IMG/VR virus record: IMGVR_UViG_3300037042_006844
Coordinates: 124,001-188,000 of that record
DNA: 64,000 nucleotides
Direction: 5' to 3' (one strand)
The position numbers and the translations under genes are program-made. Below, piece by piece: positions 38,714 to 46,134 of this stretch. Positions within the stretch are counted from its first letter, which is position 1. Each line of letters starts with the position of its first letter. Below the pieces are notes generated by a model that saw only the letters and a list, made by a program, of their open reading frames with translations, searched no databases and was not told the origin of the DNA.

Positions 38714-40111
38714 ATGAATAAAAACATCTGTTTAACTACTGACAGCTACAAGCTAAACCATTGGAATCAATACCCTCGTAACACCGAGATTGTGTATAGT
38801 TATTTCGAGTGTCGCAAAGGAGCAACCTTCGCCGAAACCCCGTTCTTCGGGCTTCAATACATTATTAAAAGCCACCTTGAGGGCGCAGTCGTGACCAGGG
38901 AGAATATTGAGAAGGCAGCTAGGCTTTGCAAATTCCATTTTGGCGACGAGCGTTACTTCAACCGTGAGGGCTGGGAATACATCCTCAATAATTGGGGAGG
39001 TAAACTTCCAGTCGTTATCAAGGCTGTTGAGGAGGGAACTGTGGTTCCGGTCAACAACGTGTTGATGACCATTGAGAATGTGGGCGGTGCCATGACGGCT
39101 TGGCTCACCAATTTCCTTGAGACGATTTTGTCCCAAGTATGGTATCCCACAACCGTTGCAGCTTTGAGCCGTGAGGTCAAAAAGAATATCAAAGAATATC
39201 TTGATTTAACCAGTGAGGGCGGACTGCTCAATTTCGGACTGCATGATTTTGGGTTCCGGGGGGCATCGTCTTGGGAATCTGCTGGTATTGGTGGTGCGGC
39301 TCATCTAATCAACTTCCTTGGCACCGATACTTTGGTCGCGATGGAGGTCGCCATGAACTATTACAATGCAAACCTCGAAGGATTAGCATACAGTGTGGCA
39401 GCAACCGAGCACAGTGTGATGACTGCTTTGGGCAAGGACGGTGAGGAAACGGTCGTCGAGAATCTGCTCAATGAATATCCCACGGGTATTCTTTCTGTGG
39501 TCTCCGATAGCTACGACATCTACAATTTTGTTAACAACATCGTTGGACGCAAATTTAAGGATTGGATTCTTGAGCGTGATGGTGTGTTCGTGGTTAGACC
39601 AGATTCCATTACTCCGAGCCATCCAACTCCTGAGCAGGAAATGGTTTGGATTATGTGGAGTCTTTGGGACAATTTTGGTGGCATTATAAACAGCAAGGGA
39701 TTTAATGTTATCAATCCCAAGGTTCGTGTTCTTTGGGGCGATGGAATCGATTTGGAAGGTATCAAAAAGATTCTGTGTGCTGTTGCCGATGCTGGATTTG
39801 CAACCGAAAATATCGCATGTTTCGGAATGGGTGGCGGACTCTTACAGAAAGTCAATCGTGATACACAGCGTTGTGCATTCAAATCGTCTGCACAGTATCG
39901 CAACGGTCAGTGGTTTGATATTTTCAAGAGTCCCAAGGATATTTCCAAGGCTTCCAAAAAGGGCAAGCTCAAGCTCACCAAGATTGACGGCAAGTTCGTT
40001 ACTGTTGGTGAAAACGATCCCGGTGAGGATTATTTGAAGGTTGTGTTTACGAATGGTGTGCTGGTCAAGGAAATTGACTTTGCAACCGTTCGCAAGAACG
40101 CTGCTCTATGA
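38714..40111 (+). CDS. nadV: nicotinamide phosphoribosyltransferase
   Basis: TDSYK, LHDFGFRG, ATEHS, SVVSDSYD, RPDS, GDGI, FGMGG.L. Confidence 0.95.
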   Translation: MNKNICLTTDSYKLNHWNQYPRNTEIVYSYFECRKGATFAETPFFGLQYIIKSHLEGAVVTRENIEKAARLCKFHFGDERYFNREGWEYILNNWGGKLPVVIKAVEEGTVVPVNNVLMTIENVGGAMTAWLTNFLETILSQVWYPTTVAALSREVKKNIKEYLDLTSEGGLLNFGLHDFGFRGASSWESAGIGGAAHLINFLGTDTLVAMEVAMNYYNANLEGLAYSVAATEHSVMTALGKDGEETVVENLLNEYPTGILSVVSDSYDIYNFVNNIVGRKFKDWILERDGVFVVRPDSITPSHPTPEQEMVWIMWSLWDNFGGIINSKGFNVINPKVRVLWGDGIDLEGIKKILCAVADAGFATENIACFGMGGGLLQKVNRDTQRCAFKSSAQYRNGQWFDIFKSPKDISKASKKGKLKLTKIDGKFVTVGENDPGEDYLKVVFTNGVLVKEIDFATVRKNAAL

Positions 40112-40977: not shown

Positions 40978-41958
40978 ATGAACGTGAACACTCTAAAGTT
41001 ATTTGCGGGAACCAGCAACGTTCCACTTGCTGAACGTATAGCTTCCAATTTTTTGAACTCCAAACTCGGCGATATTTTTCACCACAAATTTCCCAGCGGA
41101 GAAACATATTGCCAATTTCGTGAGAATATTCGTGGGTGTGATGTGTTTTTGATTCAAAGCATCACTGCTCCCGCCAACGAAAATTTGATGGAATTGTTGG
41201 TGATGGCGGATGCTGCTAGACGCGCCAGTGCAGACCGCATTACTGCAATCATTCCCTATTTTGGCTATGCCAGACAAGATAGAAAAGAGAAAAGCAGGGT
41301 GCCGATCACTGCCAAGCTCGTTTTGGACTTGATCGAAGCGAGCGGAATTGACCGTGTGGTAACTATGGATTTGCACAGTCCACAGGTCAGTGGCTTCACC
41401 AACCTTCCGTTCGACCATCTGACCTTTGAACCCGTATTGAACAATTGGATTAGAAACAAATACCATAGTTTGGCTTTGCGAGACAGTGTTATTTTGATGG
41501 CACCCGATGTTGGAGCCGTCAAACGTGTGGAAAAATACGCAACCACGCTTGGCACTGACTTTGGATTCATCAGCAAAAAGCGTGTGGGTGATGATACGGT
41601 TGAATTGCAAAGCATTGTTGGTGACGTGGCTGACAAGCACGTTGTTATCATCGATGATCTGACCGAGAGTTGCGGAACCATGATTCAAGCTGCCAAGGCT
41701 TGCAAACACAATGGAGCCAAAAATGTGACATGTGCGGTGACTCATGGAGCTTTCACGAATATTGGTGTGGAACGTTTGTGTGAAACATCCAGCATCGATC
41801 ATTTGGTTCACAGCAACACAGTGAATCATGCATGGGACACAAACATGGATATGTGCAAAGACCCTCGCAGCATCACACAGCTTGATGTCAGCATGTTGTT
41901 TGCCAAAGCAATCAGCAGCATTCACAACAACGAAAGCATCAGTGAATTATTTGTATGA
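40978..41958 (+). CDS. prs: ribose-phosphate pyrophosphokinase
   Basis: FPSGE, PYFGYARQDRK, DLHS, APDVG, IIDD..SCGT, THG. Confidence 0.95.
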   Translation: MNVNTLKLFAGTSNVPLAERIASNFLNSKLGDIFHHKFPSGETYCQFRENIRGCDVFLIQSITAPANENLMELLVMADAARRASADRITAIIPYFGYARQDRKEKSRVPITAKLVLDLIEASGIDRVVTMDLHSPQVSGFTNLPFDHLTFEPVLNNWIRNKYHSLALRDSVILMAPDVGAVKRVEKYATTLGTDFGFISKKRVGDDTVELQSIVGDVADKHVVIIDDLTESCGTMIQAAKACKHNGAKNVTCAVTHGAFTNIGVERLCETSSIDHLVHSNTVNHAWDTNMDMCKDPRSITQLDVSMLFAKAISSIHNNESISELFV

Positions 41959-42045
41959 TAGCAACATTTACTGATATATATTACCAGATACGCACATAAA
42001 AAGAAAGTGCTTGCAGTTTGATGGAACGGTGTTAAGATAGAAGTG

Positions 42046-42139
42046 TTGATGGTTCTTTGCATGGTGAGGGGAGCAGCCCTTCCAGAACATCTTTGAATGG
42101 CGGAGTCGCCTCGACCTAAAAATCGAATGCGACCATCGA
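42046..42139 (+). ncRNA. putative ~95-nt hairpin sRNA
   Basis: promoter TTGCAG-N16-TAAGAT at 42011-42038; nested pairings. Confidence 0.45.
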
Positions 42140-42148
42140 AAAGAACAG

Positions 42149-42177
42149 TTGACAGACAGAGCAAAGTCTGCTAAGAT
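42149..42177 (+). promoter_or_regulatory. tRNA array promoter
   Basis: TTGACA-N17-TAAGAT with TG extension. Confidence 0.75.
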
Positions 42178-42212
42178 AGATGAAGTTAGCAGTTGATTTT
42201 TGAAATTAGAAT

Positions 42213-42287
42213 GGGGTCTAAGCTTTAATGGTGAAGCAAGCGGCTTTTAACCGCTAGAAGACGGATCGTTACCGTCAGGCCCTACCA
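42213..42287 (+). tRNA. tRNA-Lys(TTT)
   Basis: cloverleaf, anticodon loop ct-ttt-aa, encoded CCA; atypical T-loop ATCGTTA. Confidence 0.85.
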
Positions 42288-42303
42288 AATTTACAGTTAA
42301 AAT

Positions 42304-42379
42304 GGGGTTATCGTCTAATGGCTAGGACGGGAGACTTTCAATCTCCAAATCGTGGGTTCAATTCCCCGTAGCCCTACCA
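42304..42379 (+). tRNA. tRNA-Glu(TTC)
   Basis: ggaga-ct-ttc-aa-tctcc, GTTCAATT, CCA. Confidence 0.9.
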
Positions 42380-42387
42380 TTTTCACT

Positions 42388-42610
42388 GTCAGGTCAATAA
42401 TGACAGACCGTTAGCAATAAGCGGTGTCAATGTGCAAAAAAATTCAAGTGGTATAGCACATCTGACGTTATAGATTCCACTTGATGGTGGAGGGGCGCGG
42501 AATAGCCCCCTAGACAAACAGATTGACGGATTGATATAATCGAAGGATATTATATCTAATGCAACAGATAAATCCGATATAATGGTTTGTCGAGAGTTTG
42601 ACATAACTCT
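42388..42610 (+). ncRNA. unknown multi-stem pseudoknotted RNA
   Basis: at least 8 helices including 8-bp loop pairing tcaagtgg/ccacttga. Confidence 0.6.
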
Positions 42611-42623
42611 ACAACAACATATG

Positions 42624-42699
42624 TCTGGTTGCGGGGATGAGCCAATGGTGTCTCGGTTATCCGATTGGATCGAGATTCAATAACCCTACAATCGGACCA
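42624..42699 (+). ncRNA. tRNA-sized CCA-ended non-cloverleaf RNA
   Basis: ctggttg/caatcgg stem + ACCA; no T-arm. Confidence 0.5.
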
Positions 42700-42709
42700 A
42701 TTTTATAAT

Positions 42710-42786
42710 TGCGGAATAGAGTTCTGGTGAACTCCGGTGTCTCATAAGCACTCGCTAGAAAAGTTCGATTCTTTTTTCCGCTACCA
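42710..42786 (+). tRNA. tRNA-Met(CAT), partly initiator-like
   Basis: ct-cat-aa loop; 1:72 mismatch; lacks 3 G-C anticodon-stem pairs. Confidence 0.8.
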
Positions 42787-42791
42787 ATTTC

Positions 42792-42885
42792 GGTTCTGTA
42801 GTTTAACTGGTAAAACCCCATACTTATAATATGGTAATCGCTAGATGTGCGTGACTTCTCGGTTCGAATCCGAGCAGAACCACCA
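42792..42885 (+). tRNA. tRNA-Ile(TAT) with long variable arm
   Basis: ccata-ct-tat-aa-tatgg, ~23-nt V region, GGTTCGAATCC, ACCA. Confidence 0.8.
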
Positions 42886-42949
42886 AATTTATGACGAACG
42901 TGTCATAAAAAAACAAAGTTACATTGAATTAATACTAATATAATAGAAT

Positions 42950-43276
42950 ATGAAAAAGATACTTCTAACAGTTGCAACCCTCTCTCTTCTTTTGACCGCT
43001 AGTGCGGTTGATACCAAGGAACTCTACGATTCACAATGCTCCAAGTGTCATGGAACAAATGGCAATGGTGTGACCAAGATGGGTCAAAAGCTCAATGCGA
43101 AGGATTGGACCGATGTCAAGATTCAAGCCGCAATGACCGAGACCAACATGGTCAAGGCAATTAAGGTGGGCATTAAAGATGCCGAGGACAAGACTCGCAT
43201 GAAGGCATATTCAGATATGACTGATGCCGATGTGACGAATTTGGTTACGTATATCAAAACCTTCAAAAAGCAATAA
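42950..43276 (+). CDS. class I c-type cytochrome, exported
   Basis: signal peptide, CSKCH, distal RMKAY Met. Confidence 0.9.
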   Translation: MKKILLTVATLSLLLTASAVDTKELYDSQCSKCHGTNGNGVTKMGQKLNAKDWTDVKIQAAMTETNMVKAIKVGIKDAEDKTRMKAYSDMTDADVTNLVTYIKTFKKQ

Positions 43277-43294
43277 CATCGTATATAACATCGT

Positions 43295-43624
43295 ATGAAG
43301 AAATCATTGATGCTCGGGGTTTTGATTCTCAGCGGAATGTTGTGTCAAGCACAAAACGCTGGAACCAACGAATTGTATAACAGCAAGTGCAGCAAGTGCC
43401 ATGCAAAAGATGGCTCGGGCAACACACTGATGGGCAAAAAGTATAGTGCGAAAAACTATACAGATGCAGCCGTCCAAAACAAGCTTACTGATGAAGCTTT
43501 TGATAAGTCCCTCAAAGAGGGTTACACCGATGCCGAAGGCAAGAAAGTAATGCAGGCTTTTCCAGAGCTTACGGCACTGGAGCGCAAGGAACTCATCAAA
43601 ACGATGCGGTCCTTCAAGAAATAA
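43295..43624 (+). CDS. class I c-type cytochrome, exported (paralog)
   Basis: signal peptide, CSKCH, distal VMQAF Met. Confidence 0.9.
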   Translation: MKKSLMLGVLILSGMLCQAQNAGTNELYNSKCSKCHAKDGSGNTLMGKKYSAKNYTDAAVQNKLTDEAFDKSLKEGYTDAEGKKVMQAFPELTALERKELIKTMRSFKK

Positions 43625-43643
43625 GATTGACATATCAATTTAT

Positions 43644-43716
43644 GCGGAATTAGTGTCATGAGGAGCACGGCTATCGACCAGATAGCAAGGTTGGTGCAAG
43701 TCCAAATTCCGCTCCA
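43644..43716 (+). tRNA. atypical tRNA-Gly-like (ACC)
   Basis: gcggaat/attccgc + T + CCA; loop cg-acc-ag; T-loop TGCAAGT. Confidence 0.65.
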
Positions 43717-43724
43717 CTTTTTCA

Positions 43725-43800
43725 GGGCTCTTAGCTTAATTGGTTAAGCAGCAAACTCATAATTTGTTGAGTGGGGGTTCGAGTCCCTCAGGGCCCACCA
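43725..43800 (+). tRNA. tRNA(CAT), probably Ile2
   Basis: gggctct acceptor, ct-cat-aa, GTTCGAGT, ACCA. Confidence 0.85.
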
Positions 43801-43803
43801 TTT

Positions 43804-46134
43804 CTATCCTCTTCCAACAGTTGTTATTGGGTATGACGTAATTCTCGCCCAGTCTATATCGAATTGTCGAACAGTAACAATGGTCGGCCAAATTTGGATA
43901 CCAAATTGATATCCCGTGGTTGCTGGCATGATATATGAACTGGTTCCGTATTGAATGCCATCGATCAAATAATGCATTTTGTTTGTAACGTTGTTTCTGA
44001 CCAATTGGAATTTATGCCAGCCATCATCACCAGCCGATCCACTTCCGTATTTCACAGACGTTGGGAATGATTGATTGATGCTGGCACTTCGCGCAGCATA
44101 TCTCCAAGAACCAGTGATGGACCCCACCGATCCAGTTCTTTCAAAATAAAATCCTCTGACTACCCCTGTTGCCAATATATCACTAAACAATCCGACTCGC
44201 ATTATATGATCTGGGGCTGTTTGAACATTTCTCATAATGGTTTCAAATGATCTAAAATCGCCCCATGCAATATGCATCGGTTGGGTTGGTGCCGCTATAA
44301 GCCCTGGTGTAAACGCACTCGGTGTAGTTGTGGAAGTGCTGCTTTGCCTTCTCAACACACCAGGATGCCCCAGCGTTGAACTTAGCGTGGGAAGCATTGT
44401 TCCGTTATATATATTCCAACCATCATAGACTTGGTCTGCCGACTGGTGCGCCGATAAAAATTCCCAAGATATATCTACAAGTCTGCTGGTATCTCTATAC
44501 CCCAACAAATAGCTAGCTGACGTGGCATTTGTGGCGGTTGTTGTGCTTGTTGCACTGGCAGCTTTCACTGCCCAACTGCTTGTGATTGGATACGTAGAAG
44601 CAGAAAGCAATCCTTTTTGATAATACGATCCGTGCTGACCATCGAGTTTATCAGAATCACTGGAATAGCTGCTGAAGCTTGCGGACGTTACATGTTGCGC
44701 CCAACTGCTTGTTATTGGATACGTTGAGGCTGTGTGCAGCGTTGTTCCACCTCCTGGTGCCCAACTTGCACTACGGGCATTTTCAGCCCAGCTTGAGGTA
44801 AACGGATATGTCGAACCAGTATGCAGTGTCGTGCCGCCTCCACTTGATGGTGCCCAACTTGCACTACGTGCTTGATTTGCATAGCTGGCAGTTCCAGCAA
44901 ATAATGATGCAGTAATTACTGAACAACTTATATGCCCCGCAACGTCCAGTGTATTTACTGGGTTGCTGACTCCTATACCAACTTTTCCGTTTGGTTGTGG
45001 TTGCCCAGTAGTCCCAGGAGTATTTGCGAATATAACATTGGCAATGTTTGTTTGATCTGGCGCAGTGTTTATGGCTCCTCGACCAATTGCAATGCTGTTA
45101 CCATACCCTCCTGTCGATGTATAATCTCCGATCAAAATTGAAGAGGAATTTCCCGCCGAGTTATTAACCGTGTCAGTCTGACCCGCTGCATAACCTATGA
45201 AAATGCTGTTATTTGCTGTAGTAGCCCCCGATCCAGCCCACGTTCCGATGAAATTGCTATTCAAAGCTCCAGTCGCCGAATCCCCTGCCGAATATCCAAT
45301 GAAATTGCTGTTGTATGCATTTGAAGCATTAGCACCAGCAAAGTATCCAATGAAATTGCTTTCATATGCGTTTATTGCATTAACACCCGCTCTGTCACCG
45401 ATGAAATTACTACGTGCGGCATGATCAGCACTAGAGCCAGCAAAGTATCCAATGAAATTACTGTCGCCCGCATCGGTTGAGAATTTTCCCGCTTTATATC
45501 CAATGAAATTGCTGGCTCTGACACTACCAGATGCGCCATATCCCGTTTGATATCCTATAAAATTGCACTCCATGGCATCGGGGGCATTATATCCAGAACC
45601 ACTTCCAATAAAATTGCTTTTGACGGGAGCACTTCCTGTATTGCTGACGATGTGCCCAATTAATATCAGATTTCCAGCAATACTGGCTCCCGTATTAATT
45701 TGAAGACCGTTGTTTGGAGAAATCGATGCGGATGCACTTCCACTTATGATTTTGGATGGATCGCCGCCGCCAGGTGCCCAACTTGCACTGTGGGCATGGC
45801 TTGAACTATGAGCATGGCTTGCACTGTGGGCATGGCTTGCACTACGAGCATAACTAGATGATGTCGCATTATCGGCTTTCAAAGCATGGCTTGCACTGTG
45901 TGCGTGGCTTGAGCTTCTTGCCCAGCTTGCACTGTGTGCATGGCTTGAGCTTCTAGCATAGCTCGCCGACACAGCGTTTCTTGCCCAACTGCTTGTGATC
46001 GGGTATGATGAACCAGTGCGAATTCCTGGTAGATTTACCGAATTGCCGAGTCCGTCATAATAGCTAGCCGATGCTATTTGCACCAACCGTCCATATGTGG
46101 TTGATATTTGCTTTCCTAGTAAAGAATAGTTCAT
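43804..46134 (-). CDS. fibre-like virion protein with SASWA and SNFIG repeats
   Basis: YPITSSWA/SASHA repeats, 17-aa SNFIGxxAG repeats, GKVGIGVSNP..LDV.G. Confidence 0.7.
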   Translation of the reverse strand: MNYSLLGKQISTTYGRLVQIASASYYDGLGNSVNLPGIRTGSSYPITSSWARNAVSASYARSSSHAHSASWARSSSHAHSASHALKADNATSSSYARSASHAHSASHAHSSSHAHSASWAPGGGDPSKIISGSASASISPNNGLQINTGASIAGNLILIGHIVSNTGSAPVKSNFIGSGSGYNAPDAMECNFIGYQTGYGASGSVRASNFIGYKAGKFSTDAGDSNFIGYFAGSSADHAARSNFIGDRAGVNAINAYESNFIGYFAGANASNAYNSNFIGYSAGDSATGALNSNFIGTWAGSGATTANNSIFIGYAAGQTDTVNNSAGNSSSILIGDYTSTGGYGNSIAIGRGAINTAPDQTNIANVIFANTPGTTGQPQPNGKVGIGVSNPVNTLDVAGHISCSVITASLFAGTASYANQARSASWAPSSGGGTTLHTGSTYPFTSSWAENARSASWAPGGGTTLHTASTYPITSSWAQHVTSASFSSYSSDSDKLDGQHGSYYQKGLLSASTYPITSSWAVKAASATSTTTATNATSASYLLGYRDTSRLVDISWEFLSAHQSADQVYDGWNIYNGTMLPTLSSTLGHPGVLRRQSSTSTTTPSAFTPGLIAAPTQPMHIAWGDFRSFETIMRNVQTAPDHIMRVGLFSDILATGVVRGFYFERTGSVGSITGSWRYAARSASINQSFPTSVKYGSGSAGDDGWHKFQLVRNNVTNKMHYLIDGIQYGTSSYIMPATTGYQFGIQIWPTIVTVRQFDIDWARITSYPITTVGRG

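What the first reader, a model, noticed from the sequence alone, without database searches (positions are those of the whole stretch)
42388..42610. Unrecognised ~220-nt pseudoknotted RNA directly after tRNA-Glu
Seen: gtcag(42388)/ctgac(42462) closes a junction containing gtca/tgac, accgtta-GCAA-taagcggt and atgtgc/gcacat. The loop of the last stem, tcaagtgg(42444), pairs perfectly with ccacttga(42477). Further stems follow: ggggc/gcccc, gacaaac/gtttgtc, cggatt/aatccg, gatataat/attatatc, agagtt/aactct. It matches no tmRNA, RNase P, hammerhead or group I core that I recognise. Known: phage tRNA arrays host ribozymes and large ncRNAs (theta ribozymes, GOLLD).
Basis: partly seen in the sequence, partly recalled or inferred. 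Interest (0 to 1): 0.74.

Follow-up and report, generated by a model that had tools for sequence, protein, structure and literature searches.

The report
Pseudoknotted phage RNA beside tRNA-Glu
The stretch after tRNA-Glu is a real, transcribed, roughly 308-base RNA built from several pseudoknots; it is a distant, enlarged relative of the orphan wcaG RNA of cyanophages joined to a refolded tRNA remnant, and what it does is still unknown.

Summary
The feature is real but larger than reported: metatranscriptome contigs from two runs cover only 42392/3-42689, so the RNA probably runs from about 42392 to about 42699.

The 3' half (42582-42710) belongs to a family of more than 100 freshwater phage and metagenome sequences. 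In 58 of 67 members it follows tRNA-Glu(UUC). Two H-type pseudoknots flank an invariant UGGUUGCGGGG: 94.8% of cells are paired and 17 of 24 pairs show compensatory changes.

In relatives, the 5' half is collinear with the wcaG RNA (RF01761), but scores 30-33 bits against a cut-off of 42. The window's own copy does not hit that model.

The 3' domain is similar in sequence to a neighbouring CAU tRNA (z = 8.5) but covaries as a pseudoknot.

There is no support for a ribozyme, tmRNA or coding sequence. I rate it a new variant of a known orphan class. Its function is inferred, not shown.

The parts
42149..42177 (+). Sigma-70-like promoter (TTGACA-17-TAAGAT) ahead of the tRNA-Lys, tRNA-Glu, RNA, tRNA-Met-like, tRNA-Ile unit
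   Evidence: Consensus scan, 10 of 12 matches. Relatives carry the same TTGACA/TAAGAT pair before tRNA-Lys (L062). This is a consensus match only.
42304..42379 (+). tRNA-Glu(UUC), the upstream neighbour, with an encoded CCA at 42377-42379
   Evidence: ARAGORN; Rfam tRNA 51.1 bits. It is the upstream neighbour in 58 of 67 family members.
42392..42699 (+). The whole RNA, about 308 nt. The 5' end is observed. The 3' end is inferred at the CCA that follows the last helix.
   Evidence: Metatranscriptome contigs cover 42392-42689 (X18, with adapter abutting 42392) and 42393-42610 (X20). RNA depth is zero on the flanking ORFs. Fold z = -4.44.
42393..42425 (+). Two small 5' hairpins, GUCA/UGAC and ACCGUU/AGCGGU. 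They are specific to this lineage.
   Evidence: Read from the sequence and predicted by MFE folding. No homologue, so no covariation.
42426..42484 (+). Pseudoknot A. Helix b is UCAAGUGG 42444-51 / CCACUUGA 42477-84. Helix a is (GUCA)AUGUGC 42426-35 / GCACAU-C-UGAC 42456-66.
   Evidence: Perfect 8-bp plus 6-bp (10 with one bulge) complementarity. Helix b ends directly before UGGUGGA, as the P1-type hairpin does in 33 of 34 relatives. Several relatives add a pairing between the 5' flank and the loop. Support comes from position, not from covariation.
42485..42491 (+). Linker 1, UGGUGGA, the counterpart of UGGUGCGGA in wcaG
   Evidence: Invariant UGGUG..GG in alignment A5. Aligned to the wcaG linker by Rfam and by model R2 in relatives.
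42492..42509 (+). Hairpin H1, GGGGC/GCCCC, the counterpart of P2 in wcaG
   Evidence: Family H1 is 95.2% paired, with 2 of 4 pairs showing compensatory changes. Aligned with L062.
42513..42591 (+). Optional long hairpin H2 (GACAAAC/GUUUGUC, CGGAUU/AAUCCG, GAUAUAAU/AUUAUAUC), an insertion
   Evidence: Shared only with L062 (78.7% over 89 nt). Against L062 there are one compensatory change, five wobble changes and one mismatch. Absent from most family members.
42593..42625 (+). Pseudoknot B. S1 is AGAG 42593-96 / CUCU 42607-10. S2 is GACAU 42600-04 / AUGUC 42621-25. Counterpart of PK2/P3 in wcaG.
   Evidence: Alignment to model R1. In the family, S1 is 97.9% and S2 94.7% paired, with 5 of 6 S2 pairs compensatory.
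42626..42636 (+). Invariant 11-mer UGGUUGCGGGG
   Evidence: Identical in every family member. Relaxing three of its positions found no further member in IMG/VR. It is the exact complement of the E. coli tRNA-fMet 3' end CCCCGCAACCA (PMC8887418).
42637..42699 (+). tRNA-derived 3' domain: a variable loop, then AUGGU; pseudoknot C with S3 UCUCG 42651-55 / CGAGA 42671-75 and S4 UCCGAUUG 42660-67 / CAAUCGGA 42689-96; a T-loop-like UUCAAUA at 42676-82; and CCA at 42697-99
   Evidence: R1 gives 72.5 bits, E 1.5e-17. All 4 core pairs of S3 and 6 of 8 pairs of S4 have compensatory changes, and S4 is 96.3% paired. A relative's core aligned to its neighbouring CAU tRNA gives z = 8.5.
42710..42786 (+). 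tRNA-Met-like (CAU) gene, the downstream neighbour. Its 5' processing would define the RNA's 3' trailer.
   Evidence: ARAGORN. Rfam gives only tRNA-Sec at 30.9 bits. A CAU tRNA lies downstream in 41 of 62 members.

Best explanation
It is a stable non-coding RNA of about 308 nt (42392 to about 42699, + strand). It is co-transcribed with tRNA-Lys and tRNA-Glu in a jumbo-phage tRNA operon and then cut out of the precursor.

It has two domains. The 5' domain is a diverged, enlarged version of the wcaG RNA fold: pseudoknot A, then UGGUGGA, then the GGGGC/GCCCC hairpin, then an inserted long hairpin, then pseudoknot B. The 3' domain starts at the invariant UGGUUGCGGGG. It is a remnant of a CAU-type tRNA that has been refolded into an H-type pseudoknot. 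In that fold an acceptor-like 8-bp helix ends in N-CCA and is expected to stack on a 6-bp helix that carries the old T-loop sequence.

Inferred mechanism, in three steps:
1. tRNA-processing nucleases define the ends. One cut lies 13 nt into the tRNA-Glu trailer. The 3' side is trimmed back from the next tRNA to the pseudoknot and its CCA.
2. The tRNA-like pseudoknot does the job that an intrinsic terminator does for cyanophage wcaG RNAs. It sets and protects the 3' end.
3. The wcaG-like domain is the working part and acts in trans by binding a still unknown protein or small ligand.

Shown: the structure, family membership, genomic position and presence in RNA libraries. Inferred: the processing enzymes, the exact 3' end, the strand (from context and adapter orientation) and the function.
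For: - RNA-library contigs from two runs cover only this RNA. Both stop at 42392/3, one against an adapter, and RNA depth is zero on the neighbouring ORFs.
- The conserved core has strong covariation: 94.8% of cells paired, 17 of 24 pairs with compensatory change and 110 such cells, against slid controls of 52.7% or less. The same result holds on a plain MAFFT alignment.
- The window's copy scores 72.5 bits, E 1.5e-17, and is the only copy in the 303-kb genome.
- Position is constant: after tRNA-Glu(UUC) in 58 of 67 members and before a CAU tRNA in 41 of 62.
- The 5' domain of relatives is collinear with wcaG. RF01761 gives 29.9-33.0 bits at the same place in four loci. My own model of canonical wcaG hits 11 loci at E 3e-4 to 0.07 in the same register.
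- Canonical wcaG has the same pseudoknot modules. It also lies in tRNA regions, sometimes 30 nt before a tRNA, and is usually followed by a terminator.
- The 3' domain resembles a neighbouring CAU tRNA: z = 8.5, with 0 of 2000 shuffles scoring as high. R1 also hits that tRNA.
- No member was found in representatives of 185,579 prokaryote species.
Against: - The window's own copy does not score with RF01761 or with my wcaG model. Its link to wcaG rests on transitivity through relatives and on shared architecture.
- The wcaG matches of those relatives are all below the curated cut-off.
- Contigs carry no strand, and DNA carry-over into RNA libraries cannot be fully excluded. The DNA run of the same sample had a depth of about 2 nearby.
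- The 3' end is inferred. The contig stops at 42689.
- Most family members encode CAA rather than CCA after the last helix.
- Nothing tested here shows trans action or any binding partner.
- wcaG itself was proposed to be a cis-regulatory riboswitch (PMC2864571).
Confidence: 0.55

Rival explanations
1. It is a cis-acting riboswitch or attenuator. The wcaG-like domain senses a ligand, and pseudoknot C together with the following U-run controls transcription into the downstream tRNA-Met-like and tRNA-Ile(UAU) genes.
For: wcaG was proposed as a riboswitch candidate (PMC2864571). Canonical copies are followed by a terminator hairpin and a U-tract. In this family the last helix is followed by N-CAA/CCA and a run of U. 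There is no promoter match in the 10-nt gap (42700-42709) before the next tRNA.
Against: The two helices of pseudoknot C are compatible with each other, not mutually exclusive, and both covary. The U-run sits 3-4 nt after the helix and is only 4 U long in the window. The RNA accumulates as a discrete species in RNA libraries. No ligand is known for the class.
Confidence: 0.2
2. It is a tRNA mimic or a tRNA-end binder. One version: the acceptor-like pseudoknot with its CCA end decoys a host enzyme or defence nuclease that acts on tRNA. Another version: the UGGU linkers, above all the invariant UGGUUGCGGGG, pair with tRNA 3' ends such as that of the initiator tRNA, as the T-box bulge does.
For: The 11-mer is invariant while the neighbouring helices vary freely. 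It is the exact complement of CCCCGCAACCA. Every linker begins UGG(U/C), which is complementary to (A/G)CCA. The 3' domain keeps the tRNA sequence landmarks GCGGGG, AUGGU and UUCAAUA. The RNA always sits inside a tRNA operon.
Against: The complementarity follows trivially if the 11-mer is the retained 5' acceptor strand of a tRNA remnant. Pairing would require opening a 7-bp acceptor stem. There is no Rfam T-box hit. No covariation with any tRNA discriminator base was tested.
Confidence: 0.12
3. It is a self-cleaving ribozyme (theta/HDV-like or another class) that trims the tRNA-Glu trailer and creates its own 5' end at 42392.
For: The RNA 5' end lies 13 nt after the tRNA CCA. Theta ribozymes sit next to phage tRNAs (PMC10879173). 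A sub-threshold HDV-like hit occurs in one relative's contig (L183 812-882).
Against: There is no ribozyme hit at E<=10 in the window. The region next to the 5' end is not conserved between lineages. The conserved pseudoknots lack P3/P1.1/P4 and a defined J4/2 cytosine. Theta cleavage sites lie within 5 nt of the tRNA. The L183 hit is about 830 nt away from the element.
Confidence: 0.04
4. It is a decaying tRNA pseudogene and spacer with no function of its own, or a small protein gene on the minus strand (ORF 42389-42604, 71 aa).
For: The 3' domain shows sequence similarity to a tRNA. The ORF exists.
Against: Compensatory changes maintain a non-cloverleaf fold across more than 40 distinct sequences. 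An 11-mer is invariant. The ORF region is absent or different in relatives.
Confidence: 0.04

Closest known systems
wcaG RNA motif (Rfam RF01761; Weinberg et al. 2010, PMC2864571), an orphan riboswitch candidate of marine metagenomes and T4-like cyanophages
   Same: The order of elements is the same: a hairpin or pseudoknot, then a UGGUG..GGA linker, then a GGG/CCC hairpin, then an H-type pseudoknot with an A-rich third loop, then a UGG-rich 3' tail. Both are encoded by phages. Canonical copies also lie in tRNA gene regions, some directly before a tRNA.
   Different: Relatives score 30-33 bits against a cut-off of 42, and the window's copy does not score at all. The linker sequences differ: UGGUGGA versus UGGUGCGGA, and UGGUUGCGGGG versus GUGGCGAGCCUG. 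This copy has an enlarged first pseudoknot and a 79-nt inserted hairpin. A tRNA-derived pseudoknot stands in place of the terminator. It lies after tRNA-Glu, not before sugar or high-light genes, and comes from freshwater jumbo phages.
tRNA-like structures whose acceptor arm is a pseudoknot (turnip yellow mosaic virus 3' end) and the tRNA-like domain of tmRNA. This comparison comes from my own knowledge and was not tested here.
   Same: The 3' strand that precedes N-CCA pairs with the loop of an upstream hairpin, and this would give a stacked helix of about acceptor-plus-T-arm length. T-loop-like and D-loop-like sequences are retained.
   Different: There is no evidence of aminoacylation or of RNase P or CCA-enzyme recognition. 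Most members encode CAA, not CCA. The phage has a separate ordinary tmRNA. The 5' acceptor-strand remnant is left unpaired.
Theta (minimal HDV-like) ribozymes next to phage tRNAs (PMC10879173)
   Same: A structured, pseudoknotted RNA directly downstream of a phage tRNA.
   Different: The topology is H-type, not a nested double pseudoknot. There is no Rfam HDV-family hit. The 5' end is 13 nt from the tRNA rather than within 5 nt.
Stable 'species 1' and 'species 2' RNAs encoded in the phage T4 tRNA gene cluster. This comes from my own knowledge; the literature search found no accessible text.
   Same: Non-tRNA stable RNAs that are co-transcribed and processed with phage tRNAs and have no known function.

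Membership tests
wcaG RNA (RF01761) | Score at or above Rfam's gathering cut-off of 42 bits | tested here: not met
   Window: no hit at E<=10. Whole genome: best 13.1 bits, elsewhere. Relatives: 29.9-33.0 bits at the homologous place.
wcaG RNA (RF01761) | P1 hairpin ending at a UGGUG..GGA linker, followed by a GGG/CCC hairpin (P2) | tested here: met
   Window: UCAAGUGG/CCACUUGA, then UGGUGGA, then GGGGC/GCCCC. A hairpin stands before UGGUG in 33 of 34 relatives. H1 is 95.2% paired and covaries. The linker lacks the CG of UGGUGCGGA.
wcaG RNA (RF01761) | H-type pseudoknot formed by P3 and the strand upstream of it, with an A-rich third loop | tested here: met
   Canonical: helix 5 is 96.6% and helix 6 is 100% paired, and both covary. 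This family: S1 97.9% and S2 94.7% paired. Window: AGAG/CUCU with GACAU/AUGUC.
wcaG RNA (RF01761) | Conserved 3' tail GUGGCG(A/U)GC(C/A)UG | tested here: inconclusive
   Here the tail is the invariant UGGUUGCGGGG. Both models align it to the tail, but only UGG and GCG are shared.
wcaG RNA (RF01761) | Location in the 5' UTR of exopolysaccharide or high-light genes, usually with a terminator | tested here: not met
   It lies between tRNA-Glu and a CAU tRNA, and no terminator-like site was found on the + strand. A minority of canonical copies also precede tRNAs.
HDV-like / theta ribozymes | Nested double pseudoknot (P1, P1.1, P2, P3, P4) with a catalytic C at the start of J4/2 | tested here: not met
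   No HDV-family hit at E<=10. The covarying helices form simple H-type knots, with only GAU where P3 would stand. I had no descriptor-based search tool, so a non-conserved lineage-specific core is not strictly excluded.
HDV-like / theta ribozymes | Cleavage site within about 5 nt of the tRNA | tested here: not met
   The RNA 5' end is at 42392/3, which is 13-14 nt after the CCA at 42379.
HDV-like / theta ribozymes | Self-cleavage in vitro | not testable with these tools
   This needs a bench assay.
tRNA | Cloverleaf detected by ARAGORN or the Rfam tRNA model | tested here: not met
   No call on 42380-42709. Covariation supports S3/S4, which are incompatible with T and acceptor stems.
tRNA | Sequence landmarks: 5' acceptor strand, D-loop GG, T-loop UUCRANY, 3' NCCA | tested here: met
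   UGCGGGG, AUGGU, UUCAAUA and CCA occur in order. For a relative's copy (L192), alignment to the neighbouring CAU tRNA gives z = 8.5. This indicates descent from a tRNA, not membership.
tmRNA | tRNA-like ends plus a tag reading frame | tested here: not met
   ARAGORN finds none here. The genome's tmRNA is at C1:72191-72571.
T-box leader | Rfam T-box model; stem I specifier and an antiterminator bulge UGGN | tested here: not met
   No hit at E<=10. Only the UGGN-like linkers resemble it.
GOLLD / ROOL / other large phage ncRNAs; type III antitoxin RNAs | Rfam models; tandem identical repeats for antitoxins | tested here: not met
   No hits. The modules are not sequence repeats.

The most novel reading that the evidence does not exclude
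The wcaG class as a whole, including this RNA, may not be a cis riboswitch. It may instead be a set of stable RNAs from tRNA operons whose invariant UGG(U/C) linkers dock the NCCA ends of tRNAs. Here that would be an 11-nt perfect match to the initiator tRNA 3' end. The tRNA-derived pseudoknot would present a mimic of the acceptor arm. The phage would then sense, hold or shield tRNAs, or decoy a tRNA-targeting host defence, during infection.
Probability: 0.1. Interest if true: 0.85.

Novelty: new variant of a known kind. Interest (0 to 1): 0.62.

Why it matters
wcaG has been an orphan riboswitch candidate since 2010, with no ligand and no experiment in the library I searched. This finding adds more than 100 distant relatives from a different habitat and phage type. 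They always sit inside a tRNA operon, they are joined to a refolded tRNA remnant, and they appear as a discrete RNA in metatranscriptomes.

That shifts the likely reading of the class from an mRNA leader towards a stable, processed RNA. It also gives a set of natural variants, invariant linkers against freely covarying helices, that tells an experimenter which nucleotides to mutate. Finally, it documents a tRNA sequence that evolved into a pseudoknot while keeping an acceptor-like end.

Tried and rejected
- Rfam at gathering thresholds and at E<=10 over the window region found only tRNAs.
- blastn of the element and of 4 kb around it against 50,697 phage records found only tRNA matches.
- Seventeen loci related through the upstream PRPP synthetase carry no tRNAs nearby. 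The array lies elsewhere in those contigs.
- A minus-strand reading was rejected. It would give a tRNA-like 3' end CCCCGCAACCA, but there is no matching 5' strand, ARAGORN is silent on both strands, the operon runs on the + strand and the adapter orientation agrees.
- HDV-like threading of both pseudoknots by hand failed because there is no P3/P1.1.
- I looked for a partner for GCGGGG inside the RNA. The H1 loop AACCAA and the CCCC strand are not conserved.
- Relaxing the 11-mer (TGGTNNNGGGG) gave 53 new loci, none of them a family member.
- The genome-contig scan gave 16 chance matches and no family member.
- The first-module pseudoknot across the family is present in some lineages only, and no single case is significant on its own.
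- MAFFT aligned the first hairpin poorly (60% paired), so I make no claim from it.
- A literature search for the T4 species 1 RNA found nothing usable.
- I did not run a structure or complex prediction, judging that its output would not discriminate between the hypotheses.

Full report
**Setting.** The window is part of a 303,564-bp IMG/VR virus record (window = C1:124001-188000). The genome encodes 37 tRNAs and a tmRNA. On the + strand, ARAGORN finds tRNA-Lys 42213-42287, tRNA-Glu(UUC) 42304-42379, a 330-nt gap, a tRNA-Met-like gene 42710-42786 and a tRNA-Ile(UAU) 42792-42885. A TTGACA-17-TAAGAT promoter match lies at 42149-42177. NAMPT and PRPP synthetase genes lie upstream, and two cytochrome c ORFs lie downstream.

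**Observation check.** The gap folds far better than shuffles: z = -4.08 for 42380-42709 and z = -4.44 for 42392-42699. The 308-nt stretch has four perfect 8-bp complements within 60 nt, against 0.27 expected (p = 0.002). Rfam finds only tRNAs, both at curated thresholds and at E<=10.

**Transcript evidence.** Two metatranscriptome runs hold a short part of the region. When laid on 41900-43900, their contigs cover 42392-42689 (X18, 320 nt, 7 differences, with 24 nt of Illumina adapter abutting 42392) and 42393-42610 (X20). RNA depth is zero over the flanking ORFs and the other tRNAs. So a discrete RNA starts at 42392/3, 13-14 nt after the CCA of tRNA-Glu, and extends at least to 42689. Random-primed libraries lose the last bases, so a 3' end near the CCA at 42697-99 is plausible but inferred. 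GUCA 42426-29 / UGAC 42463-66 can extend atgtgc/gcacat instead, as the MFE fold predicts. Contigs carry no strand. The + strand is inferred from the operon and from the adapter orientation.

**Relatives.** Public phage genomes have nothing similar. Two related IMG/VR contigs carry the same array, and comparing them exposed a conserved TGGTTGCGGGG. A pattern built on it found 31 IMG/VR contigs and more than 70 metagenome contigs that are true members. It found none among representatives of 185,579 prokaryote species. In 58 of 67 members with enough flank, the nearest upstream tRNA is tRNA-Glu(UUC), with a median of 94 nt to the 11-mer. In 41 of 62 a CAU tRNA follows.

**Conserved core.** The core has two H-type pseudoknots.
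- Pseudoknot B is S1 AGAG/CUCU plus S2 GGAAGU/ACUUCU. In the window S2 is GACAU/AUGUC.
- The invariant UGGUUGCGGGG follows, then a variable loop and AUGGU.
- Pseudoknot C is S3 UACUCU/AGAGUA plus S4 GUUGGGUG/CACCCAAC. In the window these are UCUCG/CGAGA and UCCGAUUG/CAAUCGGA.
- The core ends with N-CAA or N-CCA and a U-run.

On a plain MAFFT alignment of 46 distinct sequences, 93.5% of cells pair and 15 of 24 pairs show compensatory change. On the covariance-model alignment these figures are 94.8% and 17 of 24, with 110 cells, against 37-53% for slid controls. The model scores the window at 72.5 bits (E 1.5e-17, 42582-42710). This is the most divergent member and the only copy in the genome. 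Relaxing three positions of the 11-mer recovered no further member.

**The 5' half and wcaG.** In most relatives the stretch between tRNA-Glu and the 11-mer holds four elements in order: a hairpin, UGGUGGA, a GGG/CCC hairpin (95.2% paired, 2 of 4 pairs compensatory) and pseudoknot B.
- Rfam's wcaG model matches exactly this stretch at 29.9-33.0 bits in four loci, below its cut-off of 42.
- I fetched canonical wcaG RNAs (96 cyanophage records). Their architecture is a P1 hairpin whose loop pairs with its 5' flank, then UGGUGCGGA, then P2 GGG/CCC, then the pseudoknot CCUGG/CCAG with P3, then GUGGCGAGCCUG. On this alignment 91.9% of cells pair and 17 of 23 pairs are compensatory.
- A model built from the canonical copies hits 11 loci of the new family in the same register (E 3e-4 to 0.07).
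- The core model hits the first module of canonical copies (E 1.6e-5 to 1e-2). This reflects the repeated "pseudoknot then UGGUGCGG" module.
- Neither wcaG model hits the window itself. The reasons are its enlarged first module and the 79-nt hairpin H2 inserted between H1 and pseudoknot B. H2 is shared only with L062, with one compensatory and five wobble changes.

It is therefore the P1 equivalent, and atgtgc/gcacat is the pairing between loop and flank. Several relatives have such a first-module pseudoknot (CUGG/CCAG, UGAGUU/AACUCA, AUAUGU/ACAUAU), but not all do. Canonical wcaG copies also lie in tRNA regions. Twelve of 106 lie within 300 nt upstream of a tRNA. The copy in phage S-CAM1 is 30 nt before tRNA-Gly, and the copy in S-SM2 is at the end of a tRNA array.

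**The 3' domain.** The core model weakly hits a genuine CAU tRNA in two relatives. A global alignment of one member's 3' domain with that tRNA scores 18.5, against 3.4 +/- 1.8 for shuffles (z = 8.5, 0 of 2000). The shared landmarks are UGCGGGG, a D-loop GG, UAGAGUGUUCAAU and the 3' tail. The cloverleaf is not maintained. The old T-stem 5' strand pairs backwards (S3), and the 3' strand pairs with an internal segment (S4). Both helices covary. If the two helices stack as in a classical H-type knot, this would give an acceptor-like helix with an N-CCA tail stacked on a T-stem-like helix next to the T-loop sequence. That is an inference from the topology. The 11-mer equals the complement of the E. 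coli tRNA-fMet 3' end. This is expected if it is the retained 5' acceptor strand, so on its own it proves nothing.

**What it is not.** No ribozyme, T-box, tmRNA, GOLLD or ROOL model matches. The tmRNA is elsewhere in the genome. The minus-strand ORF of 71 aa has no support. The region next to the 5' end is not conserved, which argues against a shared self-cleaving core.

**Mechanism.** My preferred reading is given in the Best explanation section, with confidence 0.55 for the whole statement. The structural and family claims taken alone are much firmer, and I rate them at about 0.85. The rivals are a cis attenuator of the downstream tRNAs (0.2), a tRNA mimic or tRNA-end binder (0.12), a ribozyme (0.04), and a functionless spacer or ORF (0.04).

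**Novelty.** The RNA is not in Rfam. I found no description of it in the literature library: searches for wcaG found only the 2010 paper and annotation mentions, and a search for the 11-mer found only tRNA-fMet primers and unrelated hits. It is best filed as a new, composite variant of the orphan wcaG kind.

Noticed in passing
window 42792-42885: tRNA-Ile(UAU) is 94 nt long, with a variable arm of about 21 nt like a class II tRNA. Relatives carry the same odd gene at 92-94 nt. Which amino acid it accepts is unclear.
   Followed up: no
window 42710-42786: The 'tRNA-Met' called by ARAGORN fails the Rfam tRNA model and scores only 30.9 bits as tRNA-Sec. Relatives hold several unusual CAU tRNA-like genes of 79-87 nt.
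   Followed up: partly
window 42950-43276 and 43295-43624: Two small cytochrome c ORFs (PF00034, PF13442) sit between the tRNA genes of a phage.
   Followed up: no
window 38714-40111 and 40978-41958: Nicotinamide phosphoribosyltransferase and PRPP synthetase genes, an NAD salvage pair, lie just upstream of the tRNA unit.
   Followed up: no
window 42533-42583: GAUAUAAU occurs twice (42533 and 42576), and AUUAUAUC 42549-56 can pair perfectly with either copy, so the inserted hairpin H2 has two alternative folds. A strong sigma-70 consensus match (TAGACA-18-TATAAT, 11 of 12) lies at 42511-42540 inside the RNA.
   Followed up: no
L023, L049, L076, L099, L116 (about 20 nt after the element, roughly 150 nt long): Some relatives carry a second, related structured element. 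It starts GUUGGUGGAAAAUAGAGU and ends AACCAACACAAUUU, the same kind of tail.
   Followed up: no
L144 1810-2002; L183 812-882; L099 172-397; L070 6641-6730: Related tRNA arrays also hold a group I intron (74.8 bits), a sub-threshold HDV-F-prausnitzii-like match (40.4 bits against a cut-off of 44) and weak manA RNA matches (22 and 20.9 bits).
   Followed up: no
L336, L346, L357, L358, L372, L375, L396: Some canonical wcaG RNAs carry an extra pseudoknot module between P3 and the GUGGCG tail (UGGUGG..., then GGUUGA/UCAAC with a hairpin). Three-module versions therefore exist in the cyanophage group too.
   Followed up: partly
G000:C1:72191-72571 (outside the window): The phage encodes its own tmRNA, with tag AKENVVSYDFSYENVAAVAA, and 37 tRNAs.
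   Followed up: no
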